64,000 nt of DNA. It comes from Prasinococcaceae sp. CCMP 1430. Its lineage: Eukaryota; Plantae; Prasinodermophyta. The position numbers and the translations under genes were made by a program. The number at the start of each line of letters is the position of its first letter. Position 1 is the stretch's first letter. The stretch lies in assembly GCA_013416795.1 (NCBI GenBank), contig RQSC01000002.1, forward strand, positions 348,603 through 412,602, in the 5' to 3' direction. This document shows positions 6,162-13,299 of this stretch, piece after piece. Under the pieces are notes generated by a model that was not told the DNA's origin, made no database searches, and was given only the letters and a program-made list of their open reading frames with translations.

Positions 6162-9100
6162 ATGGACATGGAGTTTGCCGGCGCGAGCGCCTTCGACGAG
6201 GCGCTCGATGAGCTGCTCGACGACGCCGAGCCAGAGTACGCCAGCGTGGAGCCGTGGCTGCGCGCGTGCAAGGCCGCGCTGGATGCGGCGCCTGCGGGTG
6301 TCGAGCTCACCGCACGCGACGTGCCCCACGCCGCGGCGCTACCGGGCGACGCCGCTGACGCGGTGTGCAAGTGCGAGCCGCCCGAGGCCGTCGCGCTGGT
6401 CGGGTCGGTGCTGCTGCGCACGTGCGTGACGCCGCCCTCGTCGGGCGAGCGCCCGCGCGCAGACCTGGCGGTAGTCATCCCCGCGAGCTGCGTGCTGGAG
6501 AAGGACTACCTGGACTACCGCTACCACGCGAAGCGTGCGCTCTACCTGCAGTACGTGGCCGACGCGCTCGCGGCCGCGGGGATCCTCGCCGAGGGCGTCG
6601 CCCGCGCCTACCTGGAGCCGCTCGCCGGTGATGTGCACAAGCCTGCACTCGTGCTCGCGCCGGTCACCGGCGGTGGCGGCGCCGCGCTCGGACTGGCGGA
6701 CACCGAGTTCGAGGTGCGCCTCATTCCCACGCTGGCTGAGGGCGCGTTTGCGCCCGCCAAGCTGGCGGCGTCGCGCTGCAACCTGCGCGCGCGCCGCGCT
6801 GCTGAGGATGCTGGCGTGACCGCCGGGGTCACTGCCGGGGACGCTGTGGCGCGCAAGGCCGGGCTGGACTACGCCGGGCCCCGCGAGGGCGGCGCTCCCA
6901 CGCCCAAGTACAACCATGCCATCGCCGAGGACGTGTACTCGGCGAGCAGCGGGGCGCAGCTGCGCGAGGCCTTTGCCGCGGACGCACGACTGGGGCTCGC
7001 GACGCGCGCGCTCAAGCTGTGGATGCGGCGGAGGGGCATGCTTGGGGGTGCGCACTCGCTGGGCGGCTGGGAGCTTGCTGCGCTCGTTGCTGCCCTGGGG
7101 TGCGGCGGAGAGCTGCGCGCTGCTGCCTCGGGGGCGCGCGCCGCCGCACAGCAGGTGCTGGCTGCGGTGGCTGCGCGCGGCGCGCTGCGCTCGCCGCGCG
7201 CTCTCGCCGGTGGCACGGCGTCGGTACCACTGGGCGAGTGCCCATGCTTGGTGGAGGACACTGCCGCGGGCGTGCGCGTGAACTTGCTCGCGCGCGTGCG
7301 CTCCGACACTCTGCGTGAGTTCGAGTGCGAGGCAGCGCGCGCGGTGCGCGCGCTCGCTGCGCGGACACCCGAGGCACTGGGTGCACTCTTCGCGGGTGCG
7401 CCCGCGCGCGCGTGCGAGCGTTTCGATGCGGTGCTGAGCCTCGACGCGCGAGCGGCGGCTGCGAGCACGCCTGCGAGCACGCTGTCGTCGCTGGAGACGT
7501 GCGCGCAGCGCGCGGCTGAGGAGCGCGCGACGGACGCGCTCGTGGCAGCGCTCGGCGCGCGCGCGCGCCGGGTCCGTCTGCTCGGTGCCGACGTGCCACG
7601 CGCGGACTTCGCAGCGTCGGCTGCCGCCGGCAAAGCCAAGAAGGCGAAGAAGGCCAAAGGGGGCGGGGGCGCGGCGGGCAGCGCGCTCACCTGGCGTGCG
7701 CCAGCGCTGGTGGCGACCGGAAGCGCGGCGGTTGGCGTCGTGCTCGACAAAGAGTTGTGCGAGAGAATCGTCGATATCGGCCCGCCGCAGAGCGACAAAC
7801 GCGCATGCGCGCGCTTCCGTGCCCTGTGGGGCGAGCGCTCGACGCTGCGCCGATTCCGCGACGGCGCGGTGTGTGAGGCGGCGGCATGGGACGATGTCGC
7901 GCGCGCGCAAGGGAGACATGCGATTGCATCAGAGGCCGCGCGCACGGTGCTCATGCGCATGTTGCCAGACGTGCCGGTGAGCTATGCGGCGACTGAGCTG
8001 GACACGGTGTCAAATAGCGATAGCGAGGCGCTGCCGGCGCTGCGCGCGGCTTTCGATGCGCTCGCGCGGCGCCTGCGTGCCCTTCCCGGCCTACCGCTGG
8101 GCGTACGCGCGGTGGCACCGGTTGCTGCAAGCCTGCGCGGCGCAGAGCCGTGTGTGCGCGGCGCTCACCCAGTGGCCGCAGGCGCATGGGCCGATGTGGA
8201 TGCCAGAGAGGGCAACGAAGCCAAGGCGAAGAAAAACAAGAGGAAGAGGAGCGGAGCATCGGGGGGCTCTGACGTGCTGGTGGATCGCTGCATGGACGCT
8301 CACGAGGTGCTGGTGGAGGTCGAGGGGAGCGGCCGGTGGCCGAACGAGCCGGCGGCGCTGGCTGCCACGCGCGGCGCTTACGTCCTTGCGTTGGGGGAGC
8401 AGCTGCGCACCGCGCACGGCGTGACGAGCAACGCCGTGGACGACGGCGCAAGCGAGGCTGCACTGGAGGTGTTCTTTGAGGGTTTCGCGTTTCGGCTTCG
8501 CGTGCACGATACGCGCCCCAAGGGTGATGCGAACGCGAGCGCGCAGTGGCACGAGCGCGAGCGCGCGAGAGAGTACGCCTCCGCTTTCGAGGCCGCGGCC
8601 GACGCCGCGCCGGCGCTGCCGGGCGCCGTGCGGCTTGCCAAGCGCTGGCTCGGCGCGCATCTGTTTGACCCCGATGCCTTCGGCGACGAGGGCGTGGAAC
8701 TCGTCACGCTAGCCGCGTTCGGCCACATGAATGGCATGGACGGGGCGGCTGCCGCCGACAGTGGTGCAGTGCCCGCGACTGCACTTGCAGGCTTCGCTCG
8801 CTTCCTGGCCCTGGTGGGCGGCTTCGACTGGAAGGGCTCGCCGCTGTTTGTCGCTGGCATGGGGGACGACTCTGGGGTGCGACAGGCGGCCGAGCGCGCG
8901 AAGGCGTCGGCCAAGGGGGCGCGCATGGTGGTCGCGAGCGCGGTGGAACCCGCAGGGACCTCGCGTGCGCGCCTGCGCGGCACGGAGCTCGCGAGGCTTT
9001 GCGCTCTTGCCCGCGCGTGCGGCGCGCGTCTTGACGCGCTGCTCACAGGCGGCTTCGGTGCACTCCGAGCAGGCGAAGCGCTCCCCGGCACGCAGACAGA

Positions 9101-9605
9101 GCGCTGGCTGCAGCTCTTCCGAGGCTCCTGCGCCCCCTTCGACTGCGCTGTGTGCTGCCACACGCGCGCATGCGCGCGTGCGACGGCGATGGATGCCATC
9201 GACCCTGCACTAGGCGAGGCGCTCGAAGACGAGGGCGCGCTGGCCGCCGCGAGCGCTGCTCTCATGCCGCTCGCCAAGCCTGCGGGTGTGCTCGGGGCAA
9301 AGGGCCCCGCCAAGTCGTTGCTTGTGGGCTTTGATCCTGTGGCCATCCTCGCTCGGCAGGTTGCGCGCATGCCCGGCGTAGCGTTCGTGGGCTGGGACCG
9401 GTACGGCGGGCGCACAATCGCCGTCGCGCTCAAAGCGGCCGCGCGCGGCGCGGGTGACGCGCTCGCCGAGGCCATCGCCGCCGTTGGGGAGGGACTGGTC
9501 GCGAGCGTGTGCGTGCGCGCCGACCAGCGCGAGCCCGAGGAGCCCGAGGAGGAGGCGCCTAAGGCTACGGGCAAGGGAAAGGGCAAGAAGCGCGCGCGCA
9601 AGTAA
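6162..9605 (+). CDS. UTP22: Nrap/NOL6/UTP22 U3 snoRNP-associated protein
   Basis: KDYLDYRYHAKRALYL, FRALWGERSTLRRFRDGAVCEAAAW, VEVEGSGRWP and AVRLAKRWLGAHL motifs; 1147 aa. Confidence 0.93.
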   Translation: MDMEFAGASAFDEALDELLDDAEPEYASVEPWLRACKAALDAAPAGVELTARDVPHAAALPGDAADAVCKCEPPEAVALVGSVLLRTCVTPPSSGERPRADLAVVIPASCVLEKDYLDYRYHAKRALYLQYVADALAAAGILAEGVARAYLEPLAGDVHKPALVLAPVTGGGGAALGLADTEFEVRLIPTLAEGAFAPAKLAASRCNLRARRAAEDAGVTAGVTAGDAVARKAGLDYAGPREGGAPTPKYNHAIAEDVYSASSGAQLREAFAADARLGLATRALKLWMRRRGMLGGAHSLGGWELAALVAALGCGGELRAAASGARAAAQQVLAAVAARGALRSPRALAGGTASVPLGECPCLVEDTAAGVRVNLLARVRSDTLREFECEAARAVRALAARTPEALGALFAGAPARACERFDAVLSLDARAAAASTPASTLSSLETCAQRAAEERATDALVAALGARARRVRLLGADVPRADFAASAAAGKAKKAKKAKGGGGAAGSALTWRAPALVATGSAAVGVVLDKELCERIVDIGPPQSDKRACARFRALWGERSTLRRFRDGAVCEAAAWDDVARAQGRHAIASEAARTVLMRMLPDVPVSYAATELDTVSNSDSEALPALRAAFDALARRLRALPGLPLGVRAVAPVAASLRGAEPCVRGAHPVAAGAWADVDAREGNEAKAKKNKRKRSGASGGSDVLVDRCMDAHEVLVEVEGSGRWPNEPAALAATRGAYVLALGEQLRTAHGVTSNAVDDGASEAALEVFFEGFAFRLRVHDTRPKGDANASAQWHERERAREYASAFEAAADAAPALPGAVRLAKRWLGAHLFDPDAFGDEGVELVTLAAFGHMNGMDGAAAADSGAVPATALAGFARFLALVGGFDWKGSPLFVAGMGDDSGVRQAAERAKASAKGARMVVASAVEPAGTSRARLRGTELARLCALARACGARLDALLTGGFGALRAGEALPGTQTERWLQLFRGSCAPFDCAVCCHTRACARATAMDAIDPALGEALEDEGALAAASAALMPLAKPAGVLGAKGPAKSLLVGFDPVAILARQVARMPGVAFVGWDRYGGRTIAVALKAAARGAGDALAEAIAAVGEGLVASVCVRADQREPEEPEEEAPKATGKGKGKKRARK

Positions 9606-9818: not shown

Positions 9819-11507
9819 TTAGGAGCGGCGGGTCTTGGCGGGCTGTCCCAGGATGCCCTTGGTGTCGACCTCCTGCGGCGGCGTCGGCCCGCCGGCGGGC
9901 TGCGTGGGGCACAGCGCCTCCGCGGTGACGTCGCGGCAGCGGGCGAAGCGCCTCCACGACGAGCGATTGCCCGCGCCGGCGACGCCGTTGAAGTACGGGT
10001 GTGCGAGCGCGTCACGCGCGCTAATACGTTTGGTGGGGTCGTATGCAAGGAACTTGCCAAGCAAATCAATGCCGTCTTCGTCGAGCTGTGGCACCAGCTG
10101 GCTCAGTGGCTTTCCCTCCCACTGAGGAAAGGTGACCTGGTAGTCCGGCATGTCCTCCACGCCAGCCCACGTGTCCGGGCTGGGGGTTCCGAGAGCACGG
10201 AAGATATGGAAGAGCTGGTCGATCTCGATGTTCTCGCTGGGGAAGAGCGGCGCGCCTTTGGCCAGCTCGCCGAATACCGCGCCGACGCTCCACATGTCGA
10301 TCGGCATCGAGTACTTCACCTTTGGTCCGCCAAGCAGAATTTCGGGCGCCCGGTACCACAGCGTCACTACCTCGTGGGTGAGGTTGCCCACGGGTGGAGC
10401 CACCTGGCGGCTGAGACCCCATCCAGCGATCACGAGCCGACCCGTACGCCGCTCCACGAGCAGATTGTCCGGTTTGATGTCGCGGTGCAGGGTCGCCCGC
10501 GAGTGCGCAGCCTCGACACCCAGAAGCAGTTGCCACATGAGCATGCGCACCGTCTCTGCGTACAGCGGGACGTCCTCGTCCAGTGACGGGGGCGTCTGGT
10601 CCTCATCCAATTCTTCCGCGGCTTGGAAGAATTCTGGGGAATTCTTCCAAGCGTGGAGGGCCAAGTACTTACTTTCTCTCATAAACGTACTCATCCTCAC
10701 CGCTGGGCCCTCCACCGCTGGGCCCTCCGCGAGGGGGCCTATCTCGCGCTGCCTGAGTGCCCGCACCGAGGGGCTGGGGGGCGCGCTGCCCCCCGCCCCG
10801 GGATGGCTCGGCGCACACTCTTCGACGACGGTGACCGCGCTCCTGTACTCGGGCACCATCATGCCCTCCTCTTTCATGTCGCGCCAGACCTTGACGACCT
10901 CCATGTTGCTCGTGCCGCTCCGGTCGTGCTTCTTCGAGGCCGTCTCGCTCTGCGCCTTGAGGAGGGCCTCGGGCGCCCGGATGATCCACTCGCGCGGCGG
11001 CTGCCGCAGGTTGGTGTCCATGCGCTCAAAGACAATCCGCACTCGCGGCCCCATGTCCACCGCCGCGTGCAGCTTCACCACGCTCGGGCAGCCCTGCAGG
11101 TGTCGCAGCGCGCCCAGCTCGCGGACAGTGCCAATGGATAGCCCCTCCGCCTCACCCGACTCGGCGCACTTGATCGCAACGAGGCGGCCCGTGAGGCGGT
11201 CGCGTCCACGGTACACCGAGGTGCCAGGCGGGTCGGCGAAGAGGCGCTGGAAACGGTCCCCGGGCTTGCTGAGGCGCGAGATCGTGTACGCGCGGAAGGC
11301 ACGAGGCAGCACCACGGGAGGTGGCGCCGAGCCATAGAGACGCTTGTGCATCGCCTCCCACACCGACGGCTCGGCCGCAGCGGCACGCCACGAGCGGCAC
11401 ACGCGCGCAGCCTGCGACAGCCAGTTCGGCCATTCCACGTTCTCGAGCACCTTGGCGAGCACGTTCGCGTCCAGGTCGGGACCGCCAAGTACGCATGCGC
11501 GGCGCAT
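9819..11507 (-). CDS. F-box + CDK-like kinase-fold protein (probable pseudokinase)
   Basis: F-box-like LDANVLAKVLENV...AARVCRSWR...VW at about 11330-11480, then VAIK, SIGTVRE, HRDIKPDN, IAGWGL, THEVVTLWYRAPE and DPTKRISARDALAHPYF. ATG at 11507 is a candidate start only. Confidence 0.8.
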   Translation of the reverse strand: MRRACVLGGPDLDANVLAKVLENVEWPNWLSQAARVCRSWRAAAAEPSVWEAMHKRLYGSAPPPVVLPRAFRAYTISRLSKPGDRFQRLFADPPGTSVYRGRDRLTGRLVAIKCAESGEAEGLSIGTVRELGALRHLQGCPSVVKLHAAVDMGPRVRIVFERMDTNLRQPPREWIIRAPEALLKAQSETASKKHDRSGTSNMEVVKVWRDMKEEGMMVPEYRSAVTVVEECAPSHPGAGGSAPPSPSVRALRQREIGPLAEGPAVEGPAVRMSTFMRESKYLALHAWKNSPEFFQAAEELDEDQTPPSLDEDVPLYAETVRMLMWQLLLGVEAAHSRATLHRDIKPDNLLVERRTGRLVIAGWGLSRQVAPPVGNLTHEVVTLWYRAPEILLGGPKVKYSMPIDMWSVGAVFGELAKGAPLFPSENIEIDQLFHIFRALGTPSPDTWAGVEDMPDYQVTFPQWEGKPLSQLVPQLDEDGIDLLGKFLAYDPTKRISARDALAHPYFNGVAGAGNRSSWRRFARCRDVTAEALCPTQPAGGPTPPQEVDTKGILGQPAKTRRS

Positions 11508-11559
11508 CGCGTGGCACACGGGAGACACGCCGGGCACAACCTGACCCGCGCCGCCCCAG

Positions 11560-11905
11560 CGAAGAGGCGTCGGTGTCGGAGGCGTGCCGCCGCTGAGAAG
11601 CCCGCCTGCTGCGGATGCCGACGAGGCCGCCGGACCGCCGCCGCCGCTGCCGCTGCTGCCGCCGCCGCCGCCGCCGGGCGGGGCGAGCGAGGGCGCCGGC
11701 GCAGCCACGTCCTCGCCATCGCCAGCAACGGTCGCCCACAGCGCCAGCGCCGCCATGACCGCGAAAGGCAGCAGCACGTACGCGGTCATGGCCACCGAGC
11801 CGTCGCCGACAGCTCGCACGCCGCGCAGATTGAGCGCAGCGGCGACCGCGAGAACGCCGACCTTGGCGGCCCAGGCCGGCCAACCGCTGAGCCGGTCGCA
11901 GCCGT
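11560..11905 (-). pseudogene. Internal fragment of a PUT/LAT-type polyamine (APC) transporter
   Basis: LNLRGVRAVG...YVLLPFAVM resembles plant PUT/LAT LNYRGLTIVG...LPFAVM. Only about 2 TM helices are present, bounded upstream by a single N at 11906 and running in frame into the F-box ORF. Confidence 0.6.
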
Positions 11906-12714
11906 NGCCGGCAAACCGTTCGCGCCAGGCGCGCGCGCGCGCGGCGGCCGTTTCGAACCGCGCCGCGCGCCCCCGCGTGCGTTTTGACAAAGGAGCTCCC
12001 GTGGGTATTTCAATACAACATTTCATATTGGTATGTGACGCATCGTGCGCGGCACGCAAACACACCGCACATGTGACCGATGCGGGCCGAAACGCGAAAC
12101 GCGAAAGCGAAAACGTAAAAAAACGAGACCGAAAAAGGCGCGGCGTGGCAGCGCAGGTCGCTTTGAAGGCGGCTGCGCGTTTTGGTTGGGGGCGACGACG
12201 CCCGGAATTCGAGGGGCGCGCGCGCGCTGGCCGGCCGGCGCCGGCCGCGCGGGCCGCAGTTTGGGATCGATTCGACGCAGAAATGCGGCGGAGGGCGGCG
12301 GCGGCGAGGGCGATCCGCGGGTCGGAGCCCAGGCGTTGATCCGTTTCGGCGCACGGGCGCGCGCGCGCGCGCGCGCGCTCGGCCGCGGCGGCCGCGGCGG
12401 CCGGCAGGGAAGGGGGGGAGGGCTGCGTGGGCGGCGGGGGGTCTCGCCCGCGAGAGGGAGGCGGGGAGGGGAGGAGGAGAAAGGGAGGGAGCGGCCGTGT
12501 GTGTGTGTTTGTGTTTGGGGGAAGGGGGCAGGGGCGGTGCACTCGCCCGCGAGCCGCGCACCGGCCGGGGAGAGAGAGAGGGAGAGAGCTCCGCCACCGC
12601 CACGCGGCGCAGCGCACCCGGGTGGGCGAGCTCGAGGCGACAGGGCGCGCGTGAGGAAGGGCGAGGCTGTCGGGAAAGGGATTAATACGCGCCTGTGCCT
12701 CTCGCTCCGTCGCC

Positions 12715-13299
12715 ATGTCGGTGCGGCAACGCGCGGGCGCCCGAGGCGGCTCGGATAACGTCGTTGACATGAAGGCGCTCGGCGACCGCTCAGGCTCCGC
12801 CAACGCAAAGAAGGCGCCGCCGAAGGACGAGTTTGACGAGTTCATGGACTTCTGCGATGAGAACGCCGGCATGCTCGTGGGGCTGATCCTGATTGTGCTC
12901 GGCTTCGTGCTGCTGGTCATCGCGTGGATGATGTGTGCACAGCTGCGCGCCCGAGCGTTTCCCAATGGCCCGCGCGGGCGGATCGGCAAGGGCTACGCCC
13001 ACCGCCAATTCAACATGTTCGCGTCGCTGTGGTGGGTGGGGCTCGGGATGTGCGGGGTGCCTGCCATGGTGCTGCTGTACCAAGCCTACTCGGGCGACGA
13101 CCAGTGGATCGGCAAGATCCGAGGCGTGCTCACGCGCTTCGCGAAGCTGAAGGTTGTGAACCGCGTACGCAAGGCGGCGTACCTAATGCGCTGGCGTGCC
13201 AAGGAGATGGCCGAGGAGCGCCGCGTCGCGCAGTCCCGCACGACCGCTGCGGGCGCAGCGCCCACGTACGCGCCCACACGGGCCAAGAATATGGTCTAG
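12715..13299 (+). CDS. Hypothetical 2-TM membrane protein
   Basis: 194 aa ORF with coding-like composition and two hydrophobic segments (MLVGLILIVLGFVLLVIAWMM; FASLWWVGLGMCGVPAMVLLY). Family not recognised. Confidence 0.7.
   Translation: MSVRQRAGARGGSDNVVDMKALGDRSGSANAKKAPPKDEFDEFMDFCDENAGMLVGLILIVLGFVLLVIAWMMCAQLRARAFPNGPRGRIGKGYAHRQFNMFASLWWVGLGMCGVPAMVLLYQAYSGDDQWIGKIRGVLTRFAKLKVVNRVRKAAYLMRWRAKEMAEERRVAQSRTTAAGAAPTYAPTRAKNMV

What the first reader, a model, noticed from the sequence alone, without database searches (positions are those of the whole stretch)
9819..11507. F-box fused to a CDK-like probable pseudokinase lacking the Tyr15 loop and the DFG aspartate
Seen: an F-box-like segment precedes a kinase fold whose C-lobe is strongly CDKA/B-like (THEVVTLWYRAPE, EIDQLFHIF, DPTKRISA). 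The GxGxxG loop carrying T14/Y15 is replaced by FADPPGTSVY, PSTAIRE is SIGTVRE, and DFG is GWG (codon GGA at 10424-10422). VAIK, HRD and the T-loop Thr are kept, and about 140 aa are inserted in frame between subdomains V and VIa. Known: loss of the DFG Asp usually abolishes catalysis, and F-boxes recruit substrates to SCF ligases. Inference: a CDK mimic used as an SCF substrate receptor (for cyclins, Cks or CKIs) that Wee1/Cdc25 cannot regulate.
Basis: partly seen in the sequence, partly recalled or inferred. Interest (0 to 1): 0.75.

Follow-up and report, generated by a model that had tools for sequence, protein, structure and literature searches.

The report
F-box fused to dead CDK-like kinase
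A very GC-rich marine green alga (Prasinoderma coloniale according to earlier notes of this scan) has a real, conserved gene that joins an F-box, the handle that plugs proteins into SCF ubiquitin ligases, to a CDK1/2-like kinase domain that has lost key catalytic parts. It probably works as a CDK-shaped substrate or partner catcher rather than as an enzyme.

Summary
Window 9819-11507 (minus strand) is one uninterrupted 562-codon gene. It encodes an F-box-like domain (Pfam 25.5 bits, cut-off 24.3), a linker and a CDK1/2-like kinase domain. The glycine loop reads ADPPGT and DFG reads GWG. VAIK, HRD, the Mg-binding Asn, APE and the T-loop Thr are kept. About 136 disordered residues sit between the hinge and helix E. 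Two other species have the same protein with the same lesions, and their transcript contigs carry F-box and kinase on one mRNA. In one of them a 308-nt intron inside the F-box is spliced out. The F-box is under purifying selection (dN/dS 0.17). The deposited 510-aa model starts at Met53 and misses the F-box.

An exhaustive profile search found only one 50%-identity cluster with this N-terminal architecture, so the family is lineage-restricted. The C-lobe surfaces (GDSEID/helix G, L14) are as CDK-like as in true CDKs. The N-lobe and PSTAIRE helix are much degraded.

The closest known kind is a large stramenopile/alveolate family of F-box + inactive CDK-like + cyclin fusions. Its kinase-cyclin part was published in 2010; the F-box appears only in database names. 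Whether the two families share descent is unresolved.

An SCF receptor function is inferred, not shown.

The parts
9819..11507 (-). Whole coding sequence, 562 codons plus stop, with no intron in this species
   Evidence: It is colinear with the spliced transcript of the relative (L004).
11343..11477 (-). F-box (residues 11-55). It starts with LD instead of LP.
   Evidence: Pfam PF12937 25.5 bits against a cut-off of 24.3. Orthologues score 27.1 and 41.4 bits. The PDB profile search hits only F-box proteins. dN/dS is 0.17. AF2 predicts helices 14-23, 29-36, 38-44 and 47-58 at pLDDT 67-76.
11349..11351 (-). ATG of Met53, the start of the deposited 510-aa model, which omits the F-box
   Evidence: P0001 sequence and its sources UniRef and MMETSP
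11253..11342 (-). Linker between F-box and kinase (residues 56-85), with a predicted helix at 68-78
   Evidence: dN/dS 0.33
10983..11252 (-). Kinase N-lobe (residues 86-175), strongly diverged from CDKs
   Evidence: Only 21.4 bits to the CDK1 N-lobe against 209.7 bits for the C-lobe. Segment identities to the CDK consensus are 0.20-0.43.
11220..11237 (-). ADPPGT in place of the GxGxxG glycine loop (no T14/Y15). The DPP is conserved in all three orthologues.
11169..11171 (-). VAIK lysine (K113), retained
   Evidence: Invariant
10986..11027 (-). Family-specific hinge/helix D motif ERMDTNLRQPPREW. It is 71% invariant within the family but only 20% like the CDK consensus.
10578..10982 (-). Insert of about 136 residues between hinge and helix E. 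It evolves fast, is predicted mostly disordered, and is absent from P0003.
   Evidence: alignment; GC3 0.85-1.0 over most of it; dN/dS about 1; pLDDT 29-66. It is retained in the transcript of the relative and in the MMETSP-sourced peptide P0001.
9987..10577 (-). Kinase C-lobe (residues 311-507), strongly CDK1/2-like
   Evidence: 209.7 bits to human CDK1. Foldseek TM 0.86-0.90 to CDK2 and CDK3 chains. dN/dS 0.23.
10479..10487 (-). HRD, retained, followed by the retained K and N of HRDxKxxN
10416..10424 (-). GWG in place of DFG: the Mg-binding aspartate is lost
   Evidence: The same is seen in P0125, P0003, P0130, P0134 and P0132.
10377..10379 (-). T-loop threonine (T377, equivalent to CDK2 T160). 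Its three arginine partners (R129, R342, R367) are also invariant.
10215..10238 (-). SENIEIDQ, the GDSEID-like start of helix G (the CKS/KAP docking region in CDK2), with one extra residue
9822..9986 (-). C-terminal tail (residues 508-562), predicted disordered. It ends in the conserved motif QPAKTR (9822-9845).

Best explanation
This is a real, expressed, lineage-restricted gene for an F-box protein whose substrate- or partner-binding module is a catalytically impaired CDK1/2-like domain.

Shown:
- The architecture, its conservation and its purifying selection.
- The loss of the glycine loop and of the DFG aspartate.
- The near-canonical conservation of the CDK C-lobe docking surfaces and of the T-loop Thr with its arginine triad.

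Inferred:
- The F-box binds SKP1 and places the pseudo-CDK in an SCF ligase.
- There the CDK-shaped domain holds a normal CDK partner and so brings that partner, or phosphoproteins bound to it such as CDK inhibitors, to ubiquitination.
- The partner is most likely CKS on the GDSEID/L14 surface, and possibly a cyclin on the remnant xxT(I/V/L)RE helix.
- In effect it would be a hard-wired version of the animal Skp2-Cks1-CDK2 recognition module.
- The remodelled cleft (conserved DPP loop, GWG, ERMDTNLRxPPxxW hinge) is likely a binding site rather than an ATP-turnover site.
For: - F-box: Pfam over the cut-off in three species. The N-terminal family profile hits only F-box proteins among solved structures, best GID2, which also starts with LD.
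- One mRNA: transcript contig L004 of the relative spans F-box and kinase, with a 308-nt GT-AG intron inside the F-box removed. Transcript L005 likewise carries both.
- Selection: dN/dS is 0.17 for the F-box and 0.23 for the C-lobe, against about 1 for the insert.
- Lesions are conserved in all members: GWG and the DPP loop.
- CDK likeness: the best solved relatives are CDK1/2. The AF2 kinase core has pLDDT above 90, with TM 0.86-0.90 to cyclin-bound CDK2 and CDK3 chains.
- Identity to the CDK consensus is 0.79-0.90 on GDSEID/helix G, L14 and helix H-I, against 0.20-0.33 on glycine loop, helix C and hinge.
- A parallel family in stramenopiles and alveolates also joins an F-box to an inactive CDK-like domain, plus a cyclin (PMC3019232).
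Against: - No binding or ubiquitination data exist.
- The F-box lacks the LP motif and only just passes the Pfam cut-off in the window species.
- K, E, HRD, N and APE are all retained, which could mean residual or Mg-independent catalysis.
- The deposited and MMETSP-sourced protein of this species starts at Met53, so I have no transcript of this species that covers the F-box.
- No SKP1, CKS or cyclin of this genome was examined.
- The monomer AF2 model says nothing about complexes.
Confidence: 0.55

Rival explanations
1. It is an active, atypical kinase tethered to SCF. The domain would still phosphorylate substrates by an unusual, perhaps Mg-independent mechanism, as CASK does with GFG in place of DFG. 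The F-box would couple phosphorylation to ubiquitination, or control the kinase's own turnover.
For: VAIK Lys, helix C Glu, HRD Asp, the Mg-binding Asn, APE and the T-loop Thr are all invariant across three species whose synonymous divergence is near saturation. The catalytic loop is 69% invariant within the family. The CASK precedent rests on my own knowledge.
Against: Two ATP-handling elements are lost together. The glycine loop is replaced by a conserved Pro-Pro motif, and the DFG Asp is lost. The hinge is remodelled. These residues also have structural roles in pseudokinases.
Confidence: 0.2
2. It is a CDK decoy rather than a ligase receptor. The pseudo-CDK would titrate cyclin, CKS or CDK inhibitors away from the real CDKs. 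The F-box would mainly make the decoy itself unstable through SCF autoubiquitination, giving a timed sink.
For: The same conserved CDK partner surfaces and the conserved F-box fit this reading. That F-box proteins are commonly turned over by autoubiquitination is established knowledge.
Against: Nothing in the sequence separates this from the receptor model. It shares all the untested steps.
Confidence: 0.15
3. In this species the F-box is not part of the protein. The deposited 510-aa model starting at Met53 would be right, and the upstream F-box-like stretch would be an untranslated leader or a relic.
For: The only protein on record for this species (P0001, sources UniRef and MMETSP) starts at Met53. 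No contig carrying exactly the 562-aa or the 510-aa product is on record.
Against: The F-box codons are in frame and uninterrupted, and their dN/dS of 0.17 against the relative is the lowest of any region. They are intact in independent environmental assemblies. Both relatives express the fusion. Nucleotide similarity to the relative begins at the upstream ATG at 11507. ORF callers often choose a downstream Met.
Confidence: 0.07

Closest known systems
Stramenopile/alveolate F-box + inactive CDK-like + cyclin fusion proteins. Examples are the Phytophthora infestans CDK-cyclin fusions of Judelson and Ah-Fong 2010 (PMC3019232). Database names include 'cyclin-dependent kinase with F-box domain' (Achlya) and UniRef 'Cyclin-F'.
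   Same: An N-terminal F-box lies directly before a CDK-like domain with a degenerate glycine loop. The T-loop Thr and VVTLWYRxPE are retained, the C-lobe is well kept, and the kinase is predicted inactive. In the kinase tree they are the nearest clade, with weak support of 87/85.
   Different: They carry Cyclin_N/C domains at the C-terminus, which this protein lacks. Their lesions are HRN, KPKH and DFA, whereas here HRD and Asn are intact and DFG is GWG. Common descent is unresolved: both are long branches, and a tree placing the green family with plant CDKA is not rejected (AU p 0.114). The 2010 paper does not mention the F-box (0 occurrences).
Animal SCF-Skp2 with Cks1 and CDK2-cyclin A/E, which recognises phosphorylated p27 (my knowledge; PDB entries such as 7b5l appear)
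   Same: An F-box protein works together with a CDK-shaped scaffold and CKS to read a cell-cycle substrate. The CKS-docking region of the CDK C-lobe is conserved here.
   Different: There the F-box protein, Cks1 and an active CDK2 are separate chains. Here the F-box and an impaired CDK-like domain are one chain. No partner has been identified.
Cyclin F (FBXO1): an F-box fused to a cyclin domain used for substrate capture, not CDK activation (my knowledge)
   Same: A core cell-cycle fold is reused as the substrate-binding module of an F-box protein.
   Different: The reused fold is the cyclin, not the CDK.
Canonical CDK1/CDK2/CDKA
   Same: They are the best sequence and fold matches. The C-lobe scores 209.7 bits to human CDK1, and Foldseek TM to CDK2 and CDK3 chains is 0.86-0.90.
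   Different: This protein has no GxGxxG loop with T14/Y15 and no DFG Asp. PSTAIRE is degraded to SIGTVRE. It carries an added F-box, a 136-residue insert and a conserved C-terminal tail.
CASK and other pseudokinases that lack the DFG aspartate (my knowledge)
   Same: Gly replaces the DFG Asp while other catalytic residues are kept.
   Different: It belongs to a different kinase group. In addition, the glycine loop is lost here.

Membership tests
F-box proteins (Pfam PF12937/PF00646) | Profile match above the curated threshold | tested here: met
   PF12937 scores 25.5 bits against 24.3 in the window protein, 27.1 in P0125 and 41.4 in P0003. PF00646 scores 28.5 against 20.5 in P0003. A family profile hits only F-box proteins in the PDB.
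F-box proteins (Pfam PF12937/PF00646) | Three-helix F-box fold | tested here: inconclusive
   AF2 predicts helices at 14-23, 29-36, 38-44 and 47-58, but pLDDT is only 67-76. I made no separate fold comparison of this part.
F-box proteins (Pfam PF12937/PF00646) | N-terminal Leu-Pro motif | tested here: not met
   All three orthologues read L-D. The solved plant F-box protein GID2, the best PDB match, also reads L-D, so this is a tolerated variant.
F-box proteins (Pfam PF12937/PF00646) | Binds SKP1 and assembles into SCF | not testable with these tools
   Needs pull-down, two-hybrid or complex prediction.
Cyclin-dependent kinases (CMGC/CDK) | Kinase fold most similar to CDK1/2 | tested here: met
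Cyclin-dependent kinases (CMGC/CDK) | GxGxxG loop with the inhibitory T14/Y15 sites | tested here: not met
   The loop reads ADPPGT, RDPPGA or RDPPDS in the three orthologues.
Cyclin-dependent kinases (CMGC/CDK) | Catalytic K / HRD Asp / DFG Asp | tested here: not met
   K113 and HRD are present. DFG is GWG in all members.
Cyclin-dependent kinases (CMGC/CDK) | PSTAIRE-type cyclin-binding helix | tested here: inconclusive
   Only the x-T-(V/L/I)-R-E core is kept. Identity to the CDK consensus is 0.27 in the window protein and 0.53 in P0003.
Cyclin-dependent kinases (CMGC/CDK) | T-loop Thr with its arginine triad | tested here: met
   T377, R129, R342 and R367 are invariant.
Cyclin-dependent kinases (CMGC/CDK) | Cyclin-dependent kinase activity | not testable with these tools
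   Needs biochemistry.
Pseudokinases (sequence definition) | Lacks at least one of VAIK Lys, HRD Asp or DFG Asp | tested here: met
   The DFG Asp is replaced by Gly, and the glycine loop is also lost. Actual inactivity is untested.
Stramenopile/alveolate F-box-CDK-like-cyclin fusions | N-terminal F-box directly before the CDK-like domain | tested here: met
Stramenopile/alveolate F-box-CDK-like-cyclin fusions | C-terminal Cyclin_N/Cyclin_C domains | tested here: not met
   There is no cyclin hit in the window protein or its orthologues. The tail is 55 residues and predicted disordered.
Stramenopile/alveolate F-box-CDK-like-cyclin fusions | HRN / KPKH / DFA signature | tested here: not met
   The window family has HRD, KPDN and GWG.
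Stramenopile/alveolate F-box-CDK-like-cyclin fusions | Kinase domain groups with the family in a tree | tested here: inconclusive
   It is the sister clade at 87/85 support on two long branches. The alternative placement with plant CDKA is not rejected, p-AU 0.114.

The most novel reading that the evidence does not exclude
CDK-shaped pseudokinases have been recruited more than once as degron readers of SCF ligases. In this green-alga lineage a single chain (F-box plus dead CDK), with CKS bound to its conserved C-lobe, would replace the three-protein Skp2-Cks1-CDK2 device that animals use to destroy phosphorylated CDK inhibitors. The stramenopile/alveolate F-box-CDK-cyclin fusions would be a second, fuller version of the same invention.
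Probability: 0.25. Interest if true: 0.75.

Novelty: new variant of a known kind. Interest (0 to 1): 0.55.

Why it matters
If the inference holds, this is a natural single-chain CDK mimic wired to a ubiquitin ligase. It would give a compact system for asking how CDK surfaces, rather than CDK activity, are read by the cell-cycle degradation machinery. It would also help show how early-branching green algae destroy cyclins or CDK inhibitors.

The work also corrects the gene model of this species, which lacks the F-box. And it points out that the F-box of the much larger stramenopile/alveolate CDK-cyclin fusion family has gone unremarked in the one paper I could find that describes the family.

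On the other side, the green family is known from only three species, no function has been tested, and the organism is not a genetic model.

Tried and rejected
- **Insert as an unspliced intron: rejected.** GC3 is 0.85-1.0 over most of it. The relative's transcript is 100% colinear with its genomic DNA through its own insert. The MMETSP-sourced peptide of this species contains the insert. Strain variants keep the frame. The low-GC stretch at about 10620-10700 has in-frame GT..AG candidates, but I found no evidence that it is spliced.
- **Same-species transcript covering the F-box: not found.** Exact look-ups of the 510-aa and 562-aa products found nothing. A scan of metagenome contigs with the N-terminal part found no relatives.
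- **Wider distribution of the green family: not found.** The exhaustive profile search gave one cluster only. The other top hits are multi-F-box LRR proteins or plain or tandem kinases.
- **Long upstream ORF to 12989 as coding: rejected.** It crosses an N at 11905. Its frame is not shared with 99%-identical environmental variants upstream of a Gly-codon repeat. Similarity to the relative starts at 11511.
- **Literature:** four searches found no paper on an F-box-CDK-like protein in green algae and none noting the F-box of the oomycete fusions.
- **P0129**, a 49-aa Brassica fragment in the same 90% cluster, is unrelated in sequence and is a clustering artefact.
- **A first AU-test script** returned no answer. 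The rerun worked.

Full report
**What is there**

The window is about 69% G+C. Earlier notes of this scan assign the genome to the marine green alga Prasinoderma coloniale; I did not verify this myself. On the minus strand, 9819-11507 translates without interruption into 562 residues plus a stop.

Pfam finds F-box-like (PF12937) at residues 16-54 with 25.5 bits, against a curated cut-off of 24.3. It finds Pkinase with 146.7 bits in two stretches.

In CDK2 terms:
- The glycine loop GEGTYG is ADPPGT.
- The VAIK lysine (K113) and the helix C glutamate (E130) are kept.
- PSTAIRE is SIGTVRE.
- HRDxKxxN is intact.
- DFG is GWG.
- APE and the T-loop threonine (T377) are kept.
- The three arginines that hold the phosphothreonine in CDK2 (here R129, R342, R367) are kept.

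**Relatives, and proof that the fusion is real**

The word-index search returned three close clusters and then ordinary CDKs:
- The species' own deposited protein P0001 (510 aa).
- P0002/P0125 from a relative with 68% G+C.
- P0003 from a third organism with 55% G+C.

P0125 (565 aa) and P0003 (505 aa) both have the F-box, the DPP loop, GWG and the same C-terminal QPAKTR ending. Both pass the Pfam F-box threshold, at 27.1 and 41.4 bits.

Both come from culture-transcriptome contigs (L004, L005). I compared transcript L004 with genomic contigs of the same organism (L001-L003). A 308-nt GT-AG intron lies inside the F-box coding region of the relative (L001 5693-6000) and is removed in the transcript. 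The rest of the gene, including that species' own long insert, is 100% colinear. F-box and kinase are therefore on one spliced mRNA there. The window gene has no intron at that site.

A Nei-Gojobori comparison of the window gene with L004 gives these dN/dS values:

| Region | dN/dS |
|---|---|
| F-box | 0.17 |
| Linker | 0.33 |
| N-lobe | 0.38 |
| Insert | about 1.0 |
| C-lobe | 0.23 |

The F-box is thus the most constrained part.

A profile of the first 73 residues of the three orthologues hits only F-box proteins among all solved structures. The best hit is the plant SCF receptor GID2 (E 7e-5), which shares the unusual L-D start.

GWG is present in three independent environmental assemblies of the same species. 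It is not a read error.

**Gene model**

The deposited protein (sources UniRef and MMETSP) starts at Met53 and lacks the F-box. I found no transcript of this species that covers the F-box. For this species the fusion therefore rests on conservation and on the relatives.

The same MMETSP-sourced peptide contains the whole insert, including the low-GC stretch near 10620-10700. GC3 in most of the insert is 0.85-1.0. The insert is coding, not an intron.

The long ORF upstream of 11507 is not credible as coding. It crosses an N, its frame is not shared with 99%-identical strain variants, and similarity to the relative begins at 11511.

**Distribution**

I ran an exhaustive HMMER search of 1.84 billion cluster representatives with a profile of the family-specific N-terminal part (F-box, linker, N-lobe). 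It found a single cluster at E below 1e-30, which is this family. The next hit, at 1.9e-17, is a multi-F-box LRR protein. The other ten I checked are plain or tandem kinases or F-box/LRR proteins. The family is known from three organisms only.

**What the kinase-like domain has kept and lost**

Against solved structures, the C-lobe scores 209.7 bits to human CDK1 and the N-lobe only 21.4.

The table gives identity to a consensus of 41 ordinary CDKs, by segment.

| Segment | This protein | True CDKs among themselves |
|---|---|---|
| Glycine loop | 0.33 | 0.74-0.83 |
| Helix C | 0.27 | 0.74-0.83 |
| Hinge / helix D | 0.20 | 0.74-0.83 |
| GDSEID / helix G | 0.79 | 0.79-0.83 |
| L14 / CMGC insert | 0.79 | 0.79-0.83 |
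| Helices H-I | 0.90 | 0.79-0.83 |

Within the family the most invariant segments are:
- A family-specific hinge motif, ERMDTNLRxPPxxW (0.71).
- The T-loop (0.70).
- The catalytic loop (0.69).
- GDSEID/helix G (0.67).

AlphaFold2 with a 50-sequence alignment gives a confident kinase core (pLDDT above 90) and a helical F-box at pLDDT 67-76. The insert and the tail are disordered. Foldseek's best matches are cyclin-bound CDK2 and CDK3 chains (TM 0.86-0.90). AlphaFold often predicts active-like kinase conformations, so the cyclin-bound matches are not evidence for cyclin binding.

**Interpretation**

The shown facts are a conserved F-box joined to a CDK1/2-derived domain. That domain has lost two ATP-handling elements but keeps the CDK C-lobe docking surfaces and the activation-loop phosphosite apparatus.

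From established knowledge, F-boxes bind SKP1 and bring their second domain's ligands to SCF. In CDK2 the GDSEID helix and L14 loop are the CKS (and KAP) docking site. Skp2 uses Cks1 together with CDK2-cyclin to read phospho-p27.

My preferred reading is that the protein is an SCF receptor subunit. Its pseudo-CDK would hold CKS and perhaps a cyclin, and through them phosphorylated cell-cycle proteins.

This is inference. The conserved remodelled cleft (DPP loop, GWG, hinge motif) suggests a new binding function there, but I cannot say for what. The rivals are an atypical active kinase, a self-destructing decoy, and a short isoform without the F-box. They are listed with odds in their own section.

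**Comparison with what is known**

Two hits of the first search, P0078 and P0102, have an F-box, a CDK-like domain and a cyclin domain. A search with P0102 shows a large family in oomycetes, relatives of brown algae, a labyrinthulid and a dinoflagellate. Many carry PF12937. Some are named 'cyclin-dependent kinase with F-box domain', and UniRef calls them 'Cyclin-F'.

All members that I inspected read HRN, KPKH and DFA, and keep the T-loop Thr.

Judelson and Ah-Fong 2010 described the kinase-cyclin fusion in Phytophthora. They confirmed it by RT-PCR and predicted it inactive because of the Asp-to-Asn change. They do not mention an F-box (PMC3019232). Further searches found no other paper.

In a maximum-likelihood tree of 38 kinase domains, the green family (100/100) is sister to that family with only 87/85 support, and both sit on long branches. 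A tree that forces the green family together with plant CDKA-type kinases is not rejected (p-AU 0.114).

Shared descent versus independent fusion is therefore open. The non-overlapping catalytic lesions show at least that inactivation happened separately.

I file the window gene as a new variant of a known kind, not as a member of that family. It lacks the cyclin domains and the HRN/DFA signature.

**Verdict**

- Observation: confirmed.
- Interpretation: partly supported, with a shift of emphasis from cyclin to C-lobe partners.
- Novelty: new variant of a known kind.
- Interest: moderate (0.55).

Noticed in passing
P0102, P0078 and about 60 relatives; no window coordinates: A large stramenopile/alveolate family combines an F-box, an inactive CDK-like domain (HRN, KPKH, DFA) and cyclin domains. 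The 2010 paper that described the kinase-cyclin fusion does not mention the F-box. Only database names do.
   Followed up: partly
window 10621-10652: A perfect 14-nt inverted repeat with a 4-nt loop (GCTTGGAAGAATTC / GAATTCTTCCAAGC) lies inside the coding insert, in its only low-GC stretch. It is a single copy in the window. Two further imperfect inverted repeats pair 10652-10665 with 10703-10715 and with 10718-10731. It may be a footprint of a small insertion.
   Followed up: partly
window 10701-10731: There is a tandem duplication of a 15-nt unit that encodes EGPAV twice, inside the fast-evolving insert.
   Followed up: no
window 9822-9845: The extreme C-terminus, QPAKTR(R/C)(S/Q), is conserved in all three orthologues although the 40 residues before it are not. 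It may be a localisation signal or a docking peptide. Its function is unknown.
   Followed up: no
L001 5693-6000: The relative's orthologue has a 308-nt GT-AG intron inside the F-box. The window gene has none, so an intron was gained or lost between close relatives.
   Followed up: yes
window 11508-12989, minus strand: The reading frame stays open for a further 494 codons upstream and crosses a single N at 11905. Length variation in a GGC repeat (about 11640-11680) shifts this frame in 99%-identical environmental variants. The stretch is probably a leader or promoter shared with the divergent gene at 12715-13299, not coding sequence.
   Followed up: partly
window 6162-9605, plus strand: The convergent neighbour is an Nrap/Utp22-type nucleolar protein (Pfam Nrap domains 1, 3, 4 and 5). 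Its stop lies 213 nt from the stop of the F-box-kinase gene.
   Followed up: yes
P0285: A protein deposited as Batrachochytrium salamandrivorans (a chytrid fungus) is 85% identical to P0102. In the tree it sits with labyrinthulid and dinoflagellate members of the F-box-CDK-cyclin family. This may be contamination of that assembly, or a transfer.
   Followed up: no
P0129: A 49-aa Brassica fragment is listed in the same 90% cluster as the window protein but shows no visible similarity to it. This is a clustering artefact in the collection.
   Followed up: yes
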